Shown: piece after piece, positions 1,663 to 8,442 of the stretch
Position numbering within the stretch: position 1 is the stretch's first letter
Layout: each line of letters starts with the position of its first letter
IMG/VR virus record: IMGVR_UViG_3300005859_000132
Span: 1-8,442 of that record
Reading direction: 5' to 3' (one strand)
DNA: 8,442 bases
Translations under genes and position numbers: made by a program
Notes under the pieces: generated by a model
Databases searched by the model: none
What the model was told of the DNA's origin: nothing
What the model saw: only the letters and a program-made list of their open reading frames with translations

Positions 1663-2205
1663 TTAGCTTCTATAATTCTGAACTTTATGAATTTCGAATT
1701 TTGGAAGTGTTACATTATTCTGTTTCTGATATTTTCCGTGATAAGGATTCTCAACTGGTGTTAAAGTTCTAGCAAAAATTAAATGTAAAAATCTACTTCC
1801 ACTTGTTAATCTAATTGGAAATTCTGAGCCTACAATTTCTATAGTTAATTGTCCTTTGAATCCAGCATCAACAATTGTTGGAGGTATGGAAATTCCAAGT
1901 CTAGCGTAAGTTGATCTTAAATTCACGAAAGCCATTATGTCATTTGGCAATTCTATATATTCCAAAGTTGTCATTAATAAATGTTCATGTGGCTGTACTA
2001 TAATTTCGTTCAAATCTATAATTTCATAAAAATCTTCTATATTATCTCCTTCATTAAATATTTTGTTTGTCTTTTTCAATCTAGCAAATTGTGAGCCAAT
2101 TCTCAAATCTATGCCATTTTCTCTAACTATTTCTTCACTAAATGGCACTATCTTTATCCATTCTTTTTCTAGATAATATTTTAAATCTCTATCGCTTAAA
2201 ATCAT
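1663..2205 (-). CDS. dcd: dCTP deaminase/dUTPase family protein (trimeric dUTPase fold)
   Basis: MILSDRD start, [30 protein letters not shown] and PYHGKYQKQ motifs. Rudiviruses carry this family as a dUTPase; actual activity here is undetermined. Confidence 0.92.
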
Positions 2206-2260: not shown

Positions 2261-2428
2261 TCAATCTTTATCTAGATGTTGATTTGTAATTATTTCTACA
2301 GTCATATCATTTATAAGTTTATACAATTTCCCATTACATTCAATAAAATAATCTCCATTATCATAAATTATTTTACTTTCTTTACAATTTTCTGGATTTT
2401 TTGGGTTTGAGTCGACATTCTTTTTCAT
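2261..2428 (-). CDS. Hypothetical protein, 55 aa; not in the ORF track
   Basis: MKKNVDSNPKNPENCKESKIIYDNGDYFIECNGKLYKLINDMTVEIITNQHLDKD fills the gap, has its own TATA+TGTCA (2449-2460) and a T-rich/A-tract boundary after the stop. Confidence 0.7.
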   Translation of the reverse strand: MKKNVDSNPKNPENCKESKIIYDNGDYFIECNGKLYKLINDMTVEIITNQHLDKD

Positions 2429-3311: not shown

Positions 3312-3509
3312 TTGTATATAGGATATTTCATAATAAGTAACTCTCGGAATTATCTTAATTTTTTAGTCTATAATTTCCACAATTCATATACAAAATATTA
3401 TGTATATAGCTTTTGTCTTGAATTATTCATCAATTTCAACAATTATTATTCATCATATTACATATACGGCGTGAAAATTTATATTGTAGAAATTAAAATT
3501 TTTAATTGA
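3312..3509 (+). CDS. Doubtful ORF upstream of the capsid gene (position of SIRV ORF75/76)
   Basis: TTG start and Y/N/F/I-rich composition typical of AT-rich non-coding DNA. It overlaps the capsid promoter; only synteny supports it. Confidence 0.25.
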   Translation: MYIGYFIISNSRNYLNFLVYNFHNSYTKYYVYSFCLELFINFNNYYSSYYIYGVKIYIVEIKIFN

Positions 3510-3515
3510 CCAAAA
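3472..3515 (+). promoter_or_regulatory. Putative capsid gene promoter (BRE+TATA, no TGTCA)
   Basis: GAAAATTTATATT at about 3473-3485, about 30 nt before ATG 3516. Confidence 0.5.
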
Positions 3516-3920
3516 ATGGCGAAAGGTCACACACCAAGAAGCTATTCACAAAGATACGCAAAATGGGGAGCTAAGTTTACTGCATTTTCAAATCCTACTG
3601 TAGCTAGTACAATATTAACTAATGTATCTCCTGTAGCTCAAGAAAACTTCCAGACTAATGTACCAAAATTTGTAGCTGTTAATCAACAAGTAGCCGCAGT
3701 ACTTTCCGAATACGGAATTACTGGCCCACAAAGAGCAATTTATCAAGGTTATGGACTTAAGGTAGCTAGAGCTTTAAATAGGTTAGGCGGAGGCCCTGCT
3801 TTAGTAAATATGATAAACGGTTTGAAGGCTTATTATATAAATGCCTTTAATGCTAATCCAACTGTTCTAGATGCAGTTACCAATATAATTACTGGATCTC
3901 CAACTGGATACGTGAGCTAA
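3516..3920 (+). CDS. Rudivirus major capsid protein (ORF134/gp26, SIRV2 fold)
   Basis: 134 aa, MAKGHTPRSYSQRYAKW..KF.AFSNPTVASTIL..GITGP.RAIYQG.GLKVARALNRLGGGPALVNMINGLK.YYI.AFNANP.VLDAVTNIITGSPTGYVS, close to the SIRV coat protein as recalled. Confidence 0.98.
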   Translation: MAKGHTPRSYSQRYAKWGAKFTAFSNPTVASTILTNVSPVAQENFQTNVPKFVAVNQQVAAVLSEYGITGPQRAIYQGYGLKVARALNRLGGGPALVNMINGLKAYYINAFNANPTVLDAVTNIITGSPTGYVS

Positions 3921-4322: not shown

Positions 4323-5354
4323 ATGGAAGTGTCGAACACAGTTCGCCACAAAACCGTAATTTTGACTATGAATTATTCTTCAATTCGAAATGTAGCAGAA
4401 GATATAGCTCAAGTTCTTAGAAAGAATGGAGAAATTGTAACAATTTCAACAAATCCATATTTAATACCACAAAGTGATAAATTAATTGTTTTTGTTCCAT
4501 TTCATCCGCCATCACTGAATCCGTATCTTTTTACATTTCATGAATTTAAAGGAGAAAAATACTTTTATACAACTTGTGATGGTCAGCCTAATTTAAATAT
4601 TGTAAATCAATATCTATTAAAAGACATAAAATTTATTCCAAATTCAAAATTTACAGCTCAAAATCTACAGGAGGCTGGACTAGATGTAGATTTGCCGGTT
4701 TTTCATGGAGTTAACTTTGAAATTGTAGAAAAAGCTGAAAAATTAGCTATTCAATTAAAACAAAAGTTGGATAAAGACTTTCCAGACACGATAAAATTTG
4801 GCATAGTTTCTGGTTTAACTAAGAGAAAAAACATGGATTTAATGTTGAAAGTTTTCCAGGAGATAAATACTAAAATTCCAGATTTAGCTAAAAAGGTTCA
4901 CTTTTTTGTTATTTCTCATAAACAATTTAAAGATTTTGAAGTTCCTGAAAATGTACATTTTGTTTCAGAATTTGGACTAAATCCTAGAGAATATATTTTT
5001 GCATTTTACAAAATTATGGATTTTACAATTGTACCGAGTGGAACAGAAGGGTTTGGGATGCCAGTTCTAGAAAGTATGGCCATGGGTACTCCAGTTATCC
5101 ATCAACTTATGCCTCCATTTGATGAATTTACATCATGGCAGTGGAATTTATTAATAAAATCTAGTGAAGTTGAAGAGTATTACGATAAAGATCATGGACA
5201 AAAATGGAGAATTCATAAATTTGATATTCAAGATATGGTAAGTGCAATATTAATAGCTTCAGAACTTCAAGATAGAGAAGAAAGAAGTAAAAACTTAAGA
5301 GAATTAGCTAAGAGATATGATATTAATAATTTATATGTCAGATTCTTAGAATGA
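4323..5354 (+). CDS. Glycosyltransferase, GT-B fold, family 4 (SIRV ORF335-like)
   Basis: KRKN donor-binding region and PSGTEGFGMPVLESMAMGTPVI (E-x7-E) signature. Confidence 0.95.
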   Translation: MEVSNTVRHKTVILTMNYSSIRNVAEDIAQVLRKNGEIVTISTNPYLIPQSDKLIVFVPFHPPSLNPYLFTFHEFKGEKYFYTTCDGQPNLNIVNQYLLKDIKFIPNSKFTAQNLQEAGLDVDLPVFHGVNFEIVEKAEKLAIQLKQKLDKDFPDTIKFGIVSGLTKRKNMDLMLKVFQEINTKIPDLAKKVHFFVISHKQFKDFEVPENVHFVSEFGLNPREYIFAFYKIMDFTIVPSGTEGFGMPVLESMAMGTPVIHQLMPPFDEFTSWQWNLLIKSSEVEEYYDKDHGQKWRIHKFDIQDMVSAILIASELQDREERSKNLRELAKRYDINNLYVRFLE

Positions 5355-5372: not shown

Positions 5373-5417
5373 CGAAAAATTTATATGCATAAAATAGTAT
5401 ATAATTATTGTGAGAGT
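5373..5417 (+). promoter_or_regulatory. BRE-TATA promoter, accessory class, copy 1
   Basis: CGAAAAATTTATAT begins 45 nt before ATG 5418; similar to the copies at 6797 and 7277. Confidence 0.65.
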
Positions 5418-5546
5418 ATGGAGGAAGTGATAATTGAGTGTGAAAATTTAGGAAAGTTTCACGTAAAAAAAGAAGATGGAATAATAATTAAGAATATCAT
5501 AAAAATGTGTAATGATTATGGATTAGAGATCAAAGTGGTGGAATAA
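5418..5546 (+). CDS. Hypothetical protein, 42 aa; not in the ORF track
   Basis: MEEVIIECENLGKFHVKKEDGIIIKNIIKMCNDYGLEIKVVE has an upstream promoter, and its TAA directly abuts ATG 5547, which has GTGGTGG upstream. Confidence 0.72.
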   Translation: MEEVIIECENLGKFHVKKEDGIIIKNIIKMCNDYGLEIKVVE

Positions 5547-5846
5547 ATGCCGAAATATTATTACTGTTATATTTGTAAAATTTCAATATCAGGCAAAAAA
5601 CAATTTAAAAAACATGTACAGAAACATTATAATGGCGAAAGATGTCCATATTGTAATATGAAAACTAAGAATTTATTTATACATTTATCATTTTATCATA
5701 TCAATTTCAAGAAAAGCATGCTGTTGAATCGAGATTTAGCAATATTAGCGAAAGAAGCAGGAAGCGTGACAATATTAGATGACCCAGAACTAAAGTTAGA
5801 CAGATTTAAAAAATATAATATAATCAGATTGATGAAAAAGTTATAA
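5547..5846 (+). CDS. Double C2H2 zinc-finger protein
   Basis: CYIC-x12-HVQKH and CPYC-x9-HLSFYH; basic protein. Confidence 0.85.
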   Translation: MPKYYYCYICKISISGKKQFKKHVQKHYNGERCPYCNMKTKNLFIHLSFYHINFKKSMLLNRDLAILAKEAGSVTILDDPELKLDRFKKYNIIRLMKKL

Positions 5847-5870
5847 TTCTTTTTTCTTTTTTTATCTTTT
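5847..5870 (+). terminator. Oligo-T terminator
   Basis: ttcttttttctttttttatctttt immediately after the stop codon. Confidence 0.6.
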
Positions 5871-6068
5871 TCATTTCTTGTTTTGTGAATTTTCTCTTAT
5901 CAAAATTGTTACTTCTGTATTAAGATCAGATATTGCATCTCTTAAACTTAATAATAATGTCATTATGTCTTCATCACTCAAAGCTTTATTATTTTCAATT
6001 TCTTCAGCTATGTTATATAGCCATTTTGTTAATAATTTAATTCTTACTAATTCTATTTCTTTTACCAT
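5871..6068 (-). CDS. Conserved helical hypothetical protein (SIRV ORF64-like)
   Basis: Amphipathic helical pattern, GTGAG upstream of the ATG, TGTCA element at 6097-6101, synteny. Confidence 0.72.
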   Translation of the reverse strand: MVKEIELVRIKLLTKWLYNIAEEIENNKALSDEDIMTLLLSLRDAISDLNTEVTILIRENSQNKK

Positions 6069-6105
6069 CTTCTCACGTATATAAAAATTTATAATATGAC
6101 AAATA

Positions 6106-6333
6106 TCAAGTTTTACCTAGTCTGATTTTTATTTCTTCAATTTGCTTTTTAAGCTCATTCTGATTTATCTTCAACTCTTCAATTTCTGTTTTCAAATTCT
6201 GTAACTCTGAGTCCACAATTTCTTTTACTGCATCTTTTAGAGCTTGTTTTATTTTTAAATAAAGTTGAACAATAGCAAATAGTGTAGTTATAAATGTAGA
6301 AATTATAGTTAAAATAAGAGTTATCTCACTCAT
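6106..6333 (-). CDS. Membrane-anchored coiled-coil protein (SIRV ORF84-like)
   Basis: N-terminal hydrophobic helix, then heptads LQNLKTEIEELKINQNELKKQIEEIK. 8-nt overlap with the upstream ORF. Confidence 0.8.
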   Translation of the reverse strand: MSEITLILTIISTFITTLFAIVQLYLKIKQALKDAVKEIVDSELQNLKTEIEELKINQNELKKQIEEIKIRLGKT

Positions 6334-6694
6334 TTTCCGATTCGCCTAAATCTTCTTCTAAATTATCTAAATTTAAATTCTCATCTTCTTTGAACTTTTG
6401 ATATACTGAATCAACTTGTTTCGCGTATGACTGTGGATAAACTACGCGGAAATCTGCAATATAAATTGTATTCTTTTTTGGATCTTTTGCAATTAGAAAT
6501 TGAAAATAGAAAGTAAAACCTGGAATATATAAATCTACAACCATAGGCAATTCTGCATTTTTTAAAACTATAATTGAATGAGGTAAATATTTTGATAATC
6601 CATAAATTTGTCCCTGTAGTTCTAGTTCTCTAATTTTATCTATCGCGATTCGTACCGGGCCGAAAATATTCGCAAACTCATCTTTGACTTGCAT
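6326..6694 (-). CDS. Conserved rudiviral hypothetical protein (SIRV ORF110-like) with acidic tail
   Basis: 122-aa ORF coupled to the downstream gene; synteny; tail EDENLNLDNLEEDLGESENE. Confidence 0.78.
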   Translation of the reverse strand: MQVKDEFANIFGPVRIAIDKIRELELQGQIYGLSKYLPHSIIVLKNAELPMVVDLYIPGFTFYFQFLIAKDPKKNTIYIADFRVVYPQSYAKQVDSVYQKFKEDENLNLDNLEEDLGESENE

Positions 6695-6796
6695 AATTAT
6701 TTATTTCACAAAACAAGAATAAATAAAATCAAAGCAAATTTGCCATATACATTATATTATGTATATGCATTTGTTAATTGACATGTAAAGCATGAG

Positions 6797-6843
6797 CGAA
6801 AGATTTATATATTTAGATTTCGAAATGTATAATAGGGATAAAT
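6797..6843 (+). promoter_or_regulatory. BRE-TATA promoter, accessory class, copy 2
   Basis: GCGAAAGATTTATATATTT; the C at 6797 is 47 nt before ATG 6844. Confidence 0.7.
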
Positions 6844-7197
6844 ATGAGAAGTCAAAATAGACAAATTAAAAGTAAAAACAAATTACTTTTTTGTAAATTA
6901 TGTGCATTTGTAGCTCAAGATGAAAATGAGTTAGATTTTCATTATAAAATGGCTCATGATCCGGATCCAGATTTAGAATATGAATTTGAGCCAATTTTTG
7001 TAGATAAAAAAACTTATAAGAAATTGTTATATCAAGATTATTTAAGAATTTGCAAATCATATGTATGTGTCATACGTCCAAGAATTGATATTGAAGATGA
7101 TAAAAGTGAAATAAGAAGACTGTACAGAGAATATTGTTCAACTTGTGTATTAAAAAAGTTTTTAGTCGAAGAATTGAAACAAAATGGAAAAATGTGA
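6844..7197 (+). CDS. Zinc-finger protein (one C2H2 finger plus four further Cys)
   Basis: CKLC-x12-HYKMAH, acidic linker DPDPDLEYEFE, then CKSYVC and CSTC. Confidence 0.82.
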   Translation: MRSQNRQIKSKNKLLFCKLCAFVAQDENELDFHYKMAHDPDPDLEYEFEPIFVDKKTYKKLLYQDYLRICKSYVCVIRPRIDIEDDKSEIRRLYREYCSTCVLKKFLVEELKQNGKM

Positions 7198-7263
7198 GTT
7201 TTTTAATTCTTTATTTTTTTATCTATAATTTTTTTCATCTTTTAAATAATATTTCTATTTTTT
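7198..7263 (+). terminator. T-rich terminator region
   Basis: Several T6-T7 runs directly after the stop at 7197. Confidence 0.55.
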
Positions 7264-7276
7264 AATGAACAGAAAG

Positions 7277-7323
7277 CGAAAGATTTTTATATTTCGAAAG
7301 CGTATATTATATTGTGAAAGAAA
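7277..7323 (+). promoter_or_regulatory. BRE-TATA promoter, accessory class, copy 3
   Basis: GCGAAAGATTTTTATATTT; the C at 7277 is 47 nt before ATG 7324. Confidence 0.7.
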
Positions 7324-7539
7324 ATGGGAAGATATGAAGTTGAGCAAAAAATAGTCGAATTAGCTCATAAATTTGCAGTACAATATGGAGAAGAAATTTT
7401 ACATCTAAAAGTTGATGAATTAATAATGTATCTATCATCTTATTTTGACTATGAGTCATGGTTAATTTTTAAGCATAACCAATATGAGTTATTAAAACTT
7501 TTTGTAGAAACTGTAAAAGAAGATTTATCTAAATCTTAA
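7324..7539 (+). CDS. Small acidic helical hypothetical protein
   Basis: 71-aa ORF with its own promoter and a helical amphipathic pattern; about 13 D/E versus 8 K/R. Confidence 0.78.
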   Translation: MGRYEVEQKIVELAHKFAVQYGEEILHLKVDELIMYLSSYFDYESWLIFKHNQYELLKLFVETVKEDLSKS

Positions 7540-7751
7540 GTTAATATTTTTTTAATTTTCTCTTTGTCAATCTTGTAAGGTATGTAAAATTTATAATTCC
7601 AAGTATTCGGATAAAAAATCCAACCTTTACGTTTTCTAAGTATATAAAATTTCCTATTCCATGGATTTTTATAAGGAATATAAAATTTTCCGTTCCATGT
7701 ATTTGGGTCAAAATTCCAACCTTTTTTCTTTTTAACTATCATGTTTATCAT
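7536..7751 (-). CDS. Basic, Trp/aromatic-rich internal-repeat protein
   Basis: Repeats KKKKGWNFDPNTWNGKFYIPYK / NPWNRKFYI / RKRKGWIFYPNTWNYKFYIPYK. Starts just after the upstream gene's stop; alternative ATG at 7742. Confidence 0.65.
   Translation of the reverse strand: MINMIVKKKKGWNFDPNTWNGKFYIPYKNPWNRKFYILRKRKGWIFYPNTWNYKFYIPYKIDKEKIKKILT
7576..7733. repeat. Imperfect ~62-bp direct repeat with 96-bp period, plus a partial middle copy
   Basis: taaggtatgtaaaatttataattccaagtattcggataaaaaatccaaccttt (from 7576) versus taaggaatataaaattttccgttccatgtatttgggtcaaaattccaaccttt (from 7672); partial copy at about 7641-7668. Confidence 0.85.
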
Positions 7752-7755
7752 CTTT

Positions 7756-8442
7756 CTATCTTTCAGCTATATTTTTAAAGTTTTTGTAGTAGAAAATTGG
7801 CTTATATTGTTTAGCTTTTGCAGACTTTTGAGCTATTTTTATCGAATTTTCAATTTTTGCCTGACCTTGTAATTGTTCACCAAGTTGCTGAGCAAATTGT
7901 AAATCTGAATCTGAAATTCCATAAAATTTCCACTTTGTTCTCCAATAATTCAAAAAGTCAGAATATGATAATGTTCTTTTTCCAGAATTGTAACTATAAT
8001 TTTGTTGATAAGGATATCTAGCAATTTCCAAAATTGCACTAGCTATCATTTTTGCATACCAAACGTTAGAATATTTCTTATTAACAATTTGTTGAACTTG
8101 TAGAAATTGTTCGTATGAAACTGCGTAATTTTCAATTTCAGAGCTGTAAGTTATGTTTATTCCGCCAGGTGATGGATCATAAAGATGTGCTTTAAATAAT
8201 AAGCCAAATATTGAGATTACAGTTTTATCAGCTGTTAAAATTGAAACTAAATCTAATTCTGTCACGTTTTGTGGATTAAATTCTGGAATTAAAACGGCTA
8301 AATCTAGCGGAGTATAATCTAAAACCATTCCAAATACATCTGCAAAATTTTGTAAAATCATCCCATTTTCTAGTTGAACTTTGTAAGTTGGAGAATTTTC
8401 AATCTCTGGAACTAAAACAAATCTATCTAGCCACCCTAAATC
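7756..8442 (-). CDS. Large rudiviral protein, probably the minor virion protein (SIRV ORF488-like); 3' part only
   Basis: The frame stays open from 8361 to the window edge (DLGWLDRFVLVPEIENSPTYKVQLENG-MILQ...), so the true start lies outside the window. Identity inferred from synteny and recalled C-terminus. Confidence 0.75.
   Translation of the reverse strand, partial: DLGWLDRFVLVPEIENSPTYKVQLENGMILQNFADVFGMVLDYTPLDLAVLIPEFNPQNVTELDLVSILTADKTVISIFGLLFKAHLYDPSPGGINITYSSEIENYAVSYEQFLQVQQIVNKKYSNVWYAKMIASAILEIARYPYQQNYSYNSGKRTLSYSDFLNYWRTKWKFYGISDSDLQFAQQLGEQLQGQAKIENSIKIAQKSAKAKQYKPIFYYKNFKNIAER

What the first reader, a model, noticed from the sequence alone, without database searches (positions are those of the whole stretch)
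5373..7539. Three accessory cassettes under a shared strong promoter inserted among core genes: candidate anti-defence (anti-CRISPR-like) module
Seen: CGAAARATTTWTAT occurs at 5373, 6797 and 7277, 45/47/47 nt before an ATG. All three lack the TGTCA element used by core genes; copies 1 and 3 also share GTATA..ATTGTGA, and copies 2 and 3 share ATTTCGAAA. They drive four small uncharacterised + strand genes (42 aa, 99-aa double zinc finger, 117-aa zinc finger, acidic 71 aa), three cassettes placed among mostly - strand core genes. Established: rudiviral early genes, including AcrID1 and AcrIIIB1, sit behind a shared strong BRE-TATA regulatory sequence, and this has been used to find anti-defence genes. 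Inference: these are early, independently acquired host-takeover or anti-defence genes. None resembles an Acr I can recognise.
Basis: partly seen in the sequence, partly recalled or inferred. Interest (0 to 1): 0.75.

Follow-up and report, generated by a model that had tools for sequence, protein, structure and literature searches.

The report
Rudivirus internal island with shared promoter
Two of the three small gene units sit in a swap-prone spot of a Sulfolobus rod-shaped virus behind one highly conserved promoter block that elsewhere drives four unrelated small-protein families, so they are reasonable but untested anti-defence or regulator candidates; the third unit is an ordinary conserved gene pair.

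Summary
CGAAARATTTWTAT occurs exactly three times (5373, 6797, 7277; 0.01 expected by chance), 45/47/47 nt before an ATG.

The window is a complete 8.4-kb metagenomic contig of a Yellowstone-type usarudivirus, about 81% identical to SIRV8.

- **Cassette 2** (117-aa C2H2 + Cys4 zinc protein) belongs to the published ADG.04 cluster. Its SIRV5-8 orthologues are already listed as low-probability anti-defence genes (Bhoobalan-Chitty 2024).
- **Cassettes 2 and 3** occupy a variable island between two core genes. They share a roughly 50-nt BRE-TATA-TTTCGAAA block.
- In public rudiviral contigs this block precedes four unrelated small-protein families. Two of them are homologous to terminal early clusters ADG.04 and ADG.02.
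- The block matches the BRE-TATA core of terminal early promoters but not their downstream half. It is found only in this central island.
- **Cassette 1** (42 aa + 99-aa double finger) is not accessory. It is in all 11 usarudiviruses, and the 42-aa ORF is also in SIRV1/2/3. Most orthologous promoters carry the GTC element.

No product resembles a known Acr. Expression timing and function remain untested.

The parts
5373..5387 (+). Cassette 1 core promoter: purine-rich BRE (CGAAAAA) plus TATA box
   Evidence: Exact motif hit. The CGAAAAAT part is conserved in nearly all orthologous promoters examined. Seven of 11 relatives have GTC just after the TATA box; the window, SIRV8, 9 and 10 do not.
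5418..5546 (+). 42-aa acidic ORF (PHROG 12004). The true start is 5418, not the ATG at 5385 that lies inside the TATA box.
   Evidence: Orthologues are 41-42 aa in all usarudiviruses, with an unannotated 42-aa ORF in SIRV1/2/3. dN/dS 0.08-0.18.
5547..5846 (+). 99-aa basic protein with two C2H2 fingers. Its start codon directly abuts the stop of the 42-aa ORF, so the pair is bicistronic.
   Evidence: Present in all 11 usarudiviruses at 57-64% identity. dN/dS 0.15-0.32.
5847..5870 (.). T-tracts ending cassette 1, convergent with the 5871-6068 minus-strand gene
   Evidence: Read directly from the sequence.
6794..6843 (+). Cassette 2 regulatory block: BRE-TATA (6797-6811), TTTCGAAA palindrome (6818-6825) and a short leader
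   Evidence: Best match in the window to the BRE-TATA half of the terminal early-promoter matrix (17.2 bits). 90-94% identical to SIRV5, SIRV7, L015 and L019 while the CDS is 71-75% identical.
6844..7197 (+). 117-aa zinc protein: basic tail, C2H2 finger, acidic linker and a helical Cys4 domain. Member of the ADG.04 cluster.
   Evidence: SIRV8 gp35 orthologue is listed as ADG.04.
7199..7240 (+). T-tracts ending cassette 2
   Evidence: Read directly from the sequence.
7274..7323 (+). Cassette 3 regulatory block: BRE-TATA (7277-7291), TTTCGAAA (7292-7299), GTATATTATATTGTGA leader
   Evidence: A 34-nt stretch is identical in the divergent contig L018, where the protein is 47% identical and pS is 0.58. 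Matches the block found at 44 sites in public contigs.
7324..7539 (+). 71-aa acidic four-helix protein (PHROG 21593)
   Evidence: AF2 pLDDT 95.4, pTM 0.83. No structural relative other than its SIRV8 orthologue. Narrow family. dN/dS 0.26-0.51.
6326..6694 (-). Core gene (SIRV2 ORF110-like) forming the left border of the variable island
   Evidence: 85-93% identical in usarudiviruses, 67% in SIRV2.
7756..8442 (-). Core gene (SIRV2 ORF488-like, runs off the contig) forming the right border, after the small 7536-7751 gene

Best explanation
All three motif copies are canonical Sulfolobales BRE + TATA core promoters. Each heads its own + strand transcription unit, which ends in T-tracts. They do not form one class. 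Cassettes 2 and 3 lie in a variable island between two core genes (ORF110-like and ORF488-like). They carry a roughly 50-nt regulatory block: BRE-TATA, an adjacent TTTCGAAA palindrome, and a short leader ending in a GGTGA-like ribosome site 46-47 nt from the BRE. The block is kept almost unchanged while its cargo is exchanged. In related rudiviruses it drives the 117-aa zinc protein, a zinc-finger variant with a different C-domain, the 71-aa four-helix protein, a 74-aa winged-helix regulator and a 54-66-aa basic-tailed protein. Inferred mechanism: host TBP/TFB/RNA polymerase load strongly on the early-like BRE-TATA without the rudiviral GTC element. The palindrome between the TATA box and the start site is an operator for a repressor other than the one presumed to act on terminal early promoters. 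That would give the island its own timing. The cargo genes are host-interaction genes from the same pool as the terminal early/anti-defence genes: nucleic-acid-binding zinc fingers, a wHTH regulator and small acidic binders. Cassette 1 is different. It is a genus-wide, partly family-wide conserved bicistron (acidic 42-aa protein + basic double zinc finger). Its promoter is orthologous to GTC-type promoters and lost GTC in this lineage. It most likely encodes a conserved DNA-binding regulator. Shown: anatomy, distribution, conservation and homologies. Inferred: promoter strength, operator role, timing and anti-defence function.
For: Motif statistics and spacing. Identity of the virus and synteny. 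Cassette 2/3 presence or absence; cassette 3 alone in L018 and cassette 2 without cassette 3 in L016. Early-like core: a matrix from 38 distinct terminal early promoters scores cassette 2 at 17.2 (top of the window) and cassette 3 at 9.5 (second); the SIRV8 orthologue of cassette 2 is the best internal site of that genome. Constraint on the block: 34 of 34 nt are identical between the window and L018 against pS 0.58 in the adjoining CDS; the cassette 2 block is 90-94% identical versus 71-75% for the CDS. Shared block with varied cargo: 44 sites, 26 distinct sequences, 4 protein superfamilies, all in low-GC rudivirus-like contigs, and in the same island wherever context is visible. TATATTTCGAAA occurs once per complete genome, only in this island. 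Links to terminal early genes: SIRV3 gp06 is a 48-aa stand-alone version of the cassette 2 finger, sits behind a canonical early promoter and lies next to an AcrID1-family gene. The wHTH cargo is 38-46% identical to ADG.02 genes such as SIRV8 gp11. Faster divergence than core genes. Cassette 1 conservation and GTC-type orthologous promoters.
Against: There are no expression data for any usarudivirus, so strength, timing and operator function are inferred from sequence alone. The block lacks the conserved downstream half of the terminal early consensus and lies in the core region. The authors of the regulatory-sequence method put such genes in a low-probability list and expect them not to be immediate-early. 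A BRE-TATA without GTC also heads the major capsid protein gene, so this architecture does not imply early expression. Part of the cassette 2 block's conservation may simply reflect the conserved neighbouring core region. The window has no wHTH in the island and its termini are missing, so no cognate regulator can be named. The zinc proteins could equally be ordinary viral transcription factors. The cassette 2 structure model is of low confidence (pLDDT 66).
Confidence: 0.55

Rival explanations
1. One reading: all three cassettes are immediately-early, independently acquired anti-CRISPR-like or anti-defence genes under one shared strong promoter.
For: Shared BRE-TATA. Cassette 2 is ADG.04. Small, fast-evolving, uncharacterised products. 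The finger module is homologous to an early gene beside an AcrID1-family gene in SIRV3.
Against: Cassette 1 is conserved in every usarudivirus and partly in icerudiviruses, has GTC-type promoters in most relatives, and does not score as early-like. All 47 canonical early promoters are terminal and share a downstream element that the cassettes lack. No similarity to any known Acr. The published view is low probability.
Confidence: 0.12
2. The zinc-finger and wHTH cargo are viral transcription regulators that tune viral or host gene expression, for example the middle/late switch, and the palindrome serves autoregulation. There is no direct anti-defence role.
For: C2H2 fingers with basic tails. 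A wHTH with a Pfam HTH_24 hit above threshold sits behind the same block. The only characterised archaeal viral C2H2 protein binds DNA (PMC5569661). A palindrome lies between the TATA box and the start site.
Against: The 71-aa helical protein and the 54-66-aa family have no DNA-binding signature. Cargo is exchanged and lost freely (SIRV4, 10, 11 have none; the SIRV9 copy of cassette 3 is truncated), which is unexpected for core regulators. In L018 the block is kept without any zinc-finger gene in the visible 4.7 kb.
Confidence: 0.2
3. The repeated motif is only the generic strong archaeal promoter. Its conservation reflects promoter function and local recombination, with no shared regulation and no special gene class.
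For: CGAAA-type BREs and TTTATAT boxes occur at other promoters, including the capsid gene and the RHH gene. Allowing 2 mismatches gives chance-level extra hits. Promoter types swap between orthologues.
Against: The conserved block extends well beyond BRE-TATA, through TTTCGAAA and the leader, in 26 distinct sites. It is confined to one island, once or twice per genome. It stays identical where synonymous sites are near saturation.
Confidence: 0.1

Closest known systems
Regulatory-sequence-defined early / anti-defence genes (ADGs) of Rudiviridae (Bhoobalan-Chitty et al. 2024, PMC11065993)
   Same: A strong purine-rich BRE plus a TTTAWATA-type box. The regulatory sequence is far better conserved than the diverse small genes behind it. 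Cassette 2 orthologues are already listed as ADG.04. Two cargo families are homologous to the terminal ADG.04 and ADG.02 clusters.
   Different: The location is central, between core genes, not terminal. The segment downstream of the TATA box is TTTCGAAA instead of the AGTTTttACATA-type element of the terminal promoters. The published status is low probability. Cassette 3, the 54-66-aa family and cassette 1 are not in the published tables.
ADG.04 cluster (SIRV3 gp06, SMV3 gp47, SIRV5-8 orthologues)
   Same: The N-terminal basic tail, C2H2 finger and acidic tail of the 117-aa protein match SIRV3 gp06 (E 5e-6) and SMV3 gp47 (E 4e-11), and match SIRV8 gp35 over the full length (70% identity).
   Different: SIRV3 gp06 is the 48-aa finger alone. 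SMV3 gp47 has an unrelated C-domain. The window protein adds a helical domain with an invariant Cys4 site.
Rudiviral GTC-type promoters (Kessler et al. 2004, as summarised in PMC5569661)
   Same: Same BRE-TATA spacing and distance to the ATG. Orthologues of cassette 1 (7 of 11 relatives, plus SIRV2) and of cassette 3 (V3, V60, V65) use GTC-type promoters.
   Different: The three window promoters lack GTC. In cassettes 2 and 3 the same position holds TTTCGAAA.
Phage acr-aca operons
   Same: Diverse small genes behind a strong promoter that carries a palindrome. An HTH regulator is among the cargo in some relatives.
   Different: No HTH gene is in the window's island. Repression, binding and anti-defence activity are all untested. 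The units are monocistronic rather than a single operon.
AFV1p06-type viral C2H2 zinc-finger DNA-binding proteins
   Same: Small archaeal-virus proteins with a eukaryote-like C2H2 finger (PMC5569661).
   Different: No sequence similarity was detected beyond the finger signature. Pfam finger hits stay below the gathering scores.

Membership tests
Rudiviral early/ADG regulatory-sequence class | Predicted strong promoter: BRE + TATA close to the early core consensus | tested here: met
   Met for cassette 2 (17.2 bits, best in the window; its SIRV8 orthologue is the best internal site) and more weakly for cassette 3 (9.5 bits). True early sites score 25-32. Cassette 1 is not among the top 14 sites, so it does not meet this feature.
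Rudiviral early/ADG regulatory-sequence class | Shares the virus-specific sequence around the promoter with the other early genes of the same genome | tested here: not met
   The downstream half of the terminal consensus is absent from all three cassettes. The window's own termini are missing, so the test used seven related genomes.
Rudiviral early/ADG regulatory-sequence class | Clustered near the genome termini with acr/aca genes | tested here: not met
   All 47 canonical sites in seven genomes lie within about 5 kb of an end. The cassettes lie between the glycosyltransferase and the ORF488-like core gene.
Rudiviral early/ADG regulatory-sequence class | Transcribed immediately after infection | not testable with these tools
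   No transcriptome of any usarudivirus was found. SIRV2 lacks cassettes 2 and 3.
ADG.04 protein cluster | Sequence homology to cluster members | tested here: met
   The 117-aa protein is 70% identical to SIRV8 gp35 (E 1e-42). Its finger region matches SMV3 gp47 (4e-11) and SIRV3 gp06 (5e-6).
Anti-CRISPR proteins | Homology or fold similarity to a characterised Acr | tested here: not met
   tblastn against all phage and archaeal-virus records hits only orthologues. Pfam, NCBIfam and PADLOC give nothing relevant. PDB and BFVD fold searches are negative.
Anti-CRISPR proteins | Inhibits a CRISPR-Cas system | not testable with these tools
   Needs infection or interference assays.
GTC-type rudiviral promoters | GTC directly downstream of the TATA box | tested here: not met
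   Absent in the three window promoters. Present in orthologous cassette 1 promoters of SIRV4, 5, 7, 11, V3, V60, V65 and SIRV2, and in cassette 3 promoters of V3, V60 and V65.
C2H2 zinc fingers | C-X2-C-X12-13-H-X3-4-H with conserved hydrophobic core | tested here: met
   C17, C20, H33 and H38 are invariant in 17 homologues of the 117-aa protein. A PDB profile search hits CTCF and ZNF fingers at about E 1e-3. The 99-aa protein has two such signatures. Pfam scores are below the gathering cut-offs.
acr-aca-type locus | An HTH regulator encoded in the locus, with a palindromic operator in the promoter | tested here: inconclusive
   The TTTCGAAA palindrome is present. There is no HTH gene in the window's island. 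A wHTH gene sits behind the same block in L023, L024, L030, L036 and L041. Binding is untested.

The most novel reading that the evidence does not exclude
The ORF110-like/ORF488-like junction of Yellowstone-type rudiviruses is an internal anti-defence hotspot. It would run on its own repressor-controlled promoter class (BRE-TATA-TTTCGAAA), separate from both the GTC core class and the Aca8-type terminal early class. On this reading the 71-aa four-helix protein and the 54-66-aa basic-tailed protein are new anti-defence families with no known fold relatives.
Probability: 0.22. Interest if true: 0.65.

Novelty: new variant of a known kind. Interest (0 to 1): 0.45.

Why it matters
Archaeal anti-defence genes are hard to find because they have no detectable homologues. 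The regulatory-sequence approach is the main lever, and so far it trusts only genes near the genome termini.

If the internal island proves to be early or defence-related, three things follow:
- The method's search space should include core-region hotspots.
- Several new candidate families become available: the 71-aa four-helix protein, the 54-66-aa family and the zinc-finger variants.
- A second regulatory circuit, with a simple 8-bp palindrome, becomes testable in the genetically tractable S. islandicus / SIRV8-9 system.

If it is not early, that confirms the published caution. It would also show that BRE-TATA similarity alone over-predicts.

Tried and rejected
- **Parent genome.** I looked for it to compare the cassettes with this virus's own terminal promoters. 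The window is the entire contig.
- **Exact 14-mer in SIRV8.** Only the cassette 1 and cassette 2 orthologues match, so the motif is not the terminal early promoter itself.
- **aCcr1 (SIRV2 gp21-type RHH) motif AGTATTA.** It is not in any cassette promoter and occurs at chance level in the window.
- **Family and solved-structure sequence searches.** Pfam, PHROGs, NCBIfam, PADLOC and sequence searches of solved structures (PDB) give only sub-threshold finger hits and unannotated PHROGs.
- **Exhaustive profile search with the 117-aa family.** The full-length family is tiny. Other hits are eukaryotic multi-finger proteins matched through the finger only.
- **Fold search of the 117-aa model.** The model is low-confidence and returns only generic fingers, none significant.
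- **Fold search of the confident 71-aa model.** No relatives. A weak SsoCsm subunit hit (probability 0.09) was dismissed.
- **Rfam.** Nothing in the window.
- **Bidirectional promoter idea.** I considered whether the near-symmetric BRE-TATA-inverted-BRE arrangement also drives the 6326-6694 operon. That gene keeps its own conserved upstream region in genomes lacking the cassettes, so I did not pursue it.
- **Papers not held.** Kessler 2004 and Okutan 2013 could not be read.
Full report
**What the window is**

The 8442 bases are a complete metagenomic contig (IMGVR_UViG_3300005859_000132). It comes from a rod-shaped virus of Sulfolobus/Saccharolobus. It is about 81% identical in nucleotides to SIRV8 and other Yellowstone usarudiviruses and has the same gene order. 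It covers the central core block:
- two RHH genes
- a dUTPase-like gene
- the 134-aa major capsid protein (3516-3920)
- a glycosyltransferase (4323-5354)
- minus-strand homologues of SIRV2 ORF64, ORF84c, ORF110 and ORF488

The genome termini, where rudiviral early genes cluster, are not on the contig.

**The observation**

The degenerate 14-mer occurs exactly three times, all on the + strand, at 5373, 6797 and 7277. Chance expectation is 0.01. Relaxing to two mismatches adds only chance-level hits. The copies lie 45, 47 and 47 nt before the ATGs at 5418, 6844 and 7324.

Copies 1 and 3 share GTATA..ATTGTGA, and copies 2 and 3 share ATTTCGAAA. The motif reads as a purine-rich TFB-recognition element followed by a TATA box. 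Each unit ends in T-tracts. The ATG at 5385 lies inside the TATA box, and orthologues start at the equivalent of 5418, so the first product is 42 aa.

The TGTCA element is the known rudiviral GTC motif just downstream of the TATA box (Kessler 2004, as summarised in PMC5569661). About 10 of about 18 transcription units in the window have it. The capsid gene, the pyramid-protein-like gene and the 6326-6694 gene also lack it. A GTC-less strong promoter is therefore not a mark of early genes.

**Cassette 1 is not an accessory gene**

- The 42-aa ORF and the abutting 99-aa double C2H2 finger are present, intact and syntenic in all 11 sequenced usarudiviruses.
- A 42-aa orthologue, unannotated, lies in SIRV1, SIRV2 and SIRV3.
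- In SIRV2, and in SIRV4, 5, 7, 11, V3, V60 and V65, its promoter has GTC right after the TATA box. The window, SIRV8, 9 and 10 have lost it; in the window TATGTCATAA has become TATGCATAAA.
- Its promoter is not among the best matches to the early-promoter matrix.
- The 42-aa ORF is strongly constrained (dN/dS 0.08-0.18).
- One divergent contig (L018) lacks the pair.

**Cassettes 2 and 3 are a variable island**

They lie between the ORF110-like and ORF488-like core genes. SIRV2 has only a 90-bp gap there. They are present in SIRV5, 6, 7, 8, 9, V3, V60 and V65, and absent from SIRV4, 10 and 11. The SIRV9 copy of cassette 3 is truncated. L018 has cassette 3 alone, and L016 has cassette 2 without cassette 3.

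Their products are 50-70% identical to usarudiviral orthologues, against 85-93% for the flanking core proteins. dN/dS is 0.25-0.51, against 0.07-0.11 for the capsid protein.

**Relation to the published early/ADG promoters**

In seven complete usarudivirus genomes I found 47 sites (38 distinct) of the canonical terminal promoter: AGAGAAAAnTTTAwATA followed by an AGTTTttACATA-type segment and a GGTGA leader. All lie within about 5 kb of an end.

A matrix built from its BRE-TATA half gave these scores:

| Site | Score (bits) |
|---|---|
| Cassette 2, window | 17.2 (best in window) |
| Cassette 3, window | 9.5 (second in window) |
| True terminal early sites | 25-32 |
| SIRV8 cassette 2 orthologue | 13.8 (best internal site in that genome) |

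The downstream half does not match.

Bhoobalan-Chitty et al. list the cassette 2 orthologues SIRV5 gp29, SIRV6 gp28, SIRV7 gp27 and SIRV8 gp35 as ADG.04. They appear in the low-probability sheet, reserved for genes with an early-like BRE-TATA that sit among core genes. [quoted passage not shown] Orthologues of cassettes 1 and 3 are not in their tables.

**A shared block with exchangeable cargo**

The cassette 3 block is identical over 34 nt between the window and L018. Yet the proteins there are 47% identical and synonymous sites are more than half changed. The cassette 2 block is 90-94% identical to SIRV5, SIRV7, L015 and L019, against 71-75% for the CDS.

I scanned the viral and metagenome collections with the block (BRE, TATA, TTTCGAAA). 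This gave 44 sites with 26 distinct sequences in low-GC rudivirus-like contigs, always 46-47 nt before an ATG. Conservation continues outside the searched 22 nt. Hits in higher-GC contigs look like chance.

The genes behind the block fall into four unrelated superfamilies:

| Cargo family | Sites | Notes |
|---|---|---|
| 71-73-aa four-helix protein (cassette 3) | 16 | |
| Zinc-finger proteins | 15 | 117-aa Cys4 type (cassette 2); 104-112-aa type with an SMV3 gp47-like C-domain; that C-domain alone |
| 54-66-aa protein | 9 | Basic tail and a DPEYR..DELAKLF core |
| 74-aa winged-helix protein | 5 | Pfam HTH_24 above threshold |

Wherever flanks are visible, the site is the same island. In complete genomes TATATTTCGAAA occurs once, and only there.

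Two cargo families tie back to terminal early genes:
- SIRV3 gp06 is a 48-aa stand-alone copy of the cassette 2 finger module. It sits behind a canonical early promoter and next to an AcrID1-family gene.
- The wHTH cargo is 38-46% identical to ADG.02 genes such as SIRV8 gp11.

Promoter type is not fixed per gene. Cassette 3 in V3, V60 and V65, and the wHTH gene in L016, use GTC-type promoters.

**The proteins**

- **117 aa.** Basic tail, C2H2 finger (C17, C20, H33, H38 invariant), acidic linker, and a helical domain with invariant C70, C75, C98 and C101. The model is weak (pLDDT 66) and only fingers match. The full-length family is tiny.
- **71 aa.** A confidently predicted four-helix protein (pLDDT 95.4, pTM 0.83). 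It has no structural relative beyond its SIRV8 orthologue.
- **Known Acrs and defence proteins.** None of the four products matches a known Acr, a defence protein or a curated family.

**Most likely mechanism**

Shown: three independent promoter-to-terminator units, and a conserved regulatory block specific to one variable island whose cargo overlaps the pool of terminal early gene families.

Inferred: strong GTC-independent initiation, with a repressor binding the TTTCGAAA palindrome between the TATA box and the start site. This would give the island a timing distinct from both the core genes and the terminal early genes. The cargo would act on host or viral nucleic acids (fingers, wHTH) or proteins (small acidic helices). 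Anti-defence is plausible but untested.

Cassette 1 is best read as a conserved DNA-binding regulator pair.

**Verdict**

The kind of thing is known, and cassette 2 is already listed. The island-specific block with swapped cargo is a new variant worth a time-course and deletion test in the SIRV8/9 laboratory system.

Noticed in passing
L006 3489-3617 (SIRV2 NC_004086 about 16394-16522); also SIRV1 and SIRV3: An unannotated 42-aa ORF, orthologous to the window's 5418-5546 gene, lies behind a GTC-type promoter between ORF156 and ORF64 of SIRV2. It appears to be a missed conserved small gene in the Icelandic type viruses.
   Followed up: partly
window 2261-2428 (-): A 55-aa ORF with a GTC-type promoter has no match in the phage/archaeal-virus collection or in the fetched usarudivirus genomes. 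It does have a 59% identical homologue next to the dUTPase gene in L027, a 40.7-kb rudivirus contig from the same metagenome.
   Followed up: partly
window 7536-7751 (-): The 71-aa product contains two copies of a roughly 21-aa W/Y-rich unit (KKKGWNFDPNTWNGKFYIPYK / KRKGWIFYPNTWNYKFYIPYK). Most orthologues are 43-68 aa and align over only about half of it, which suggests an internal duplication. No DNA-level tandem repeat was detected.
   Followed up: partly
L003 13022-13321 (SIRV8), and the same gene in SIRV9, SIRV4 and SIRV7: The 99-aa double-finger ORF is intact. It is annotated as a 62-aa product starting at an internal ATG, which cuts off the first zinc finger.
   Followed up: yes
window 3468-3515 (capsid gene promoter): The major capsid protein promoter lacks GTC.
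   Followed up: partly
L009/L010/L011 (V3, V60, V65) cassette 3 orthologues; L016 979-1203: Orthologous genes switch promoter class between viruses. Cassette 3 in V3, V60 and V65, and the 74-aa wHTH gene in L016, use GTC-type promoters. Elsewhere the same genes use the TTTCGAAA block.
   Followed up: partly
window 1663-2205 (-): Among the seven fully fetched usarudivirus genomes, only SIRV5 matches this dUTPase/dCTP-deaminase-like gene. It is also found in SIRV2 and L027, so it is a variable gene inside the core block.
   Followed up: no
window 5871-6068 (-): The ORF64-like 65-aa gene is only about 30% identical to the SIRV8, SIRV9 and V3/V60/V65 versions, but 59% identical to an SIRV4 gene. 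SIRV8 and SIRV9 carry two extra + strand genes (gp31, gp32) here. The glycosyltransferase/ORF84c junction is therefore a second variable spot.
   Followed up: no
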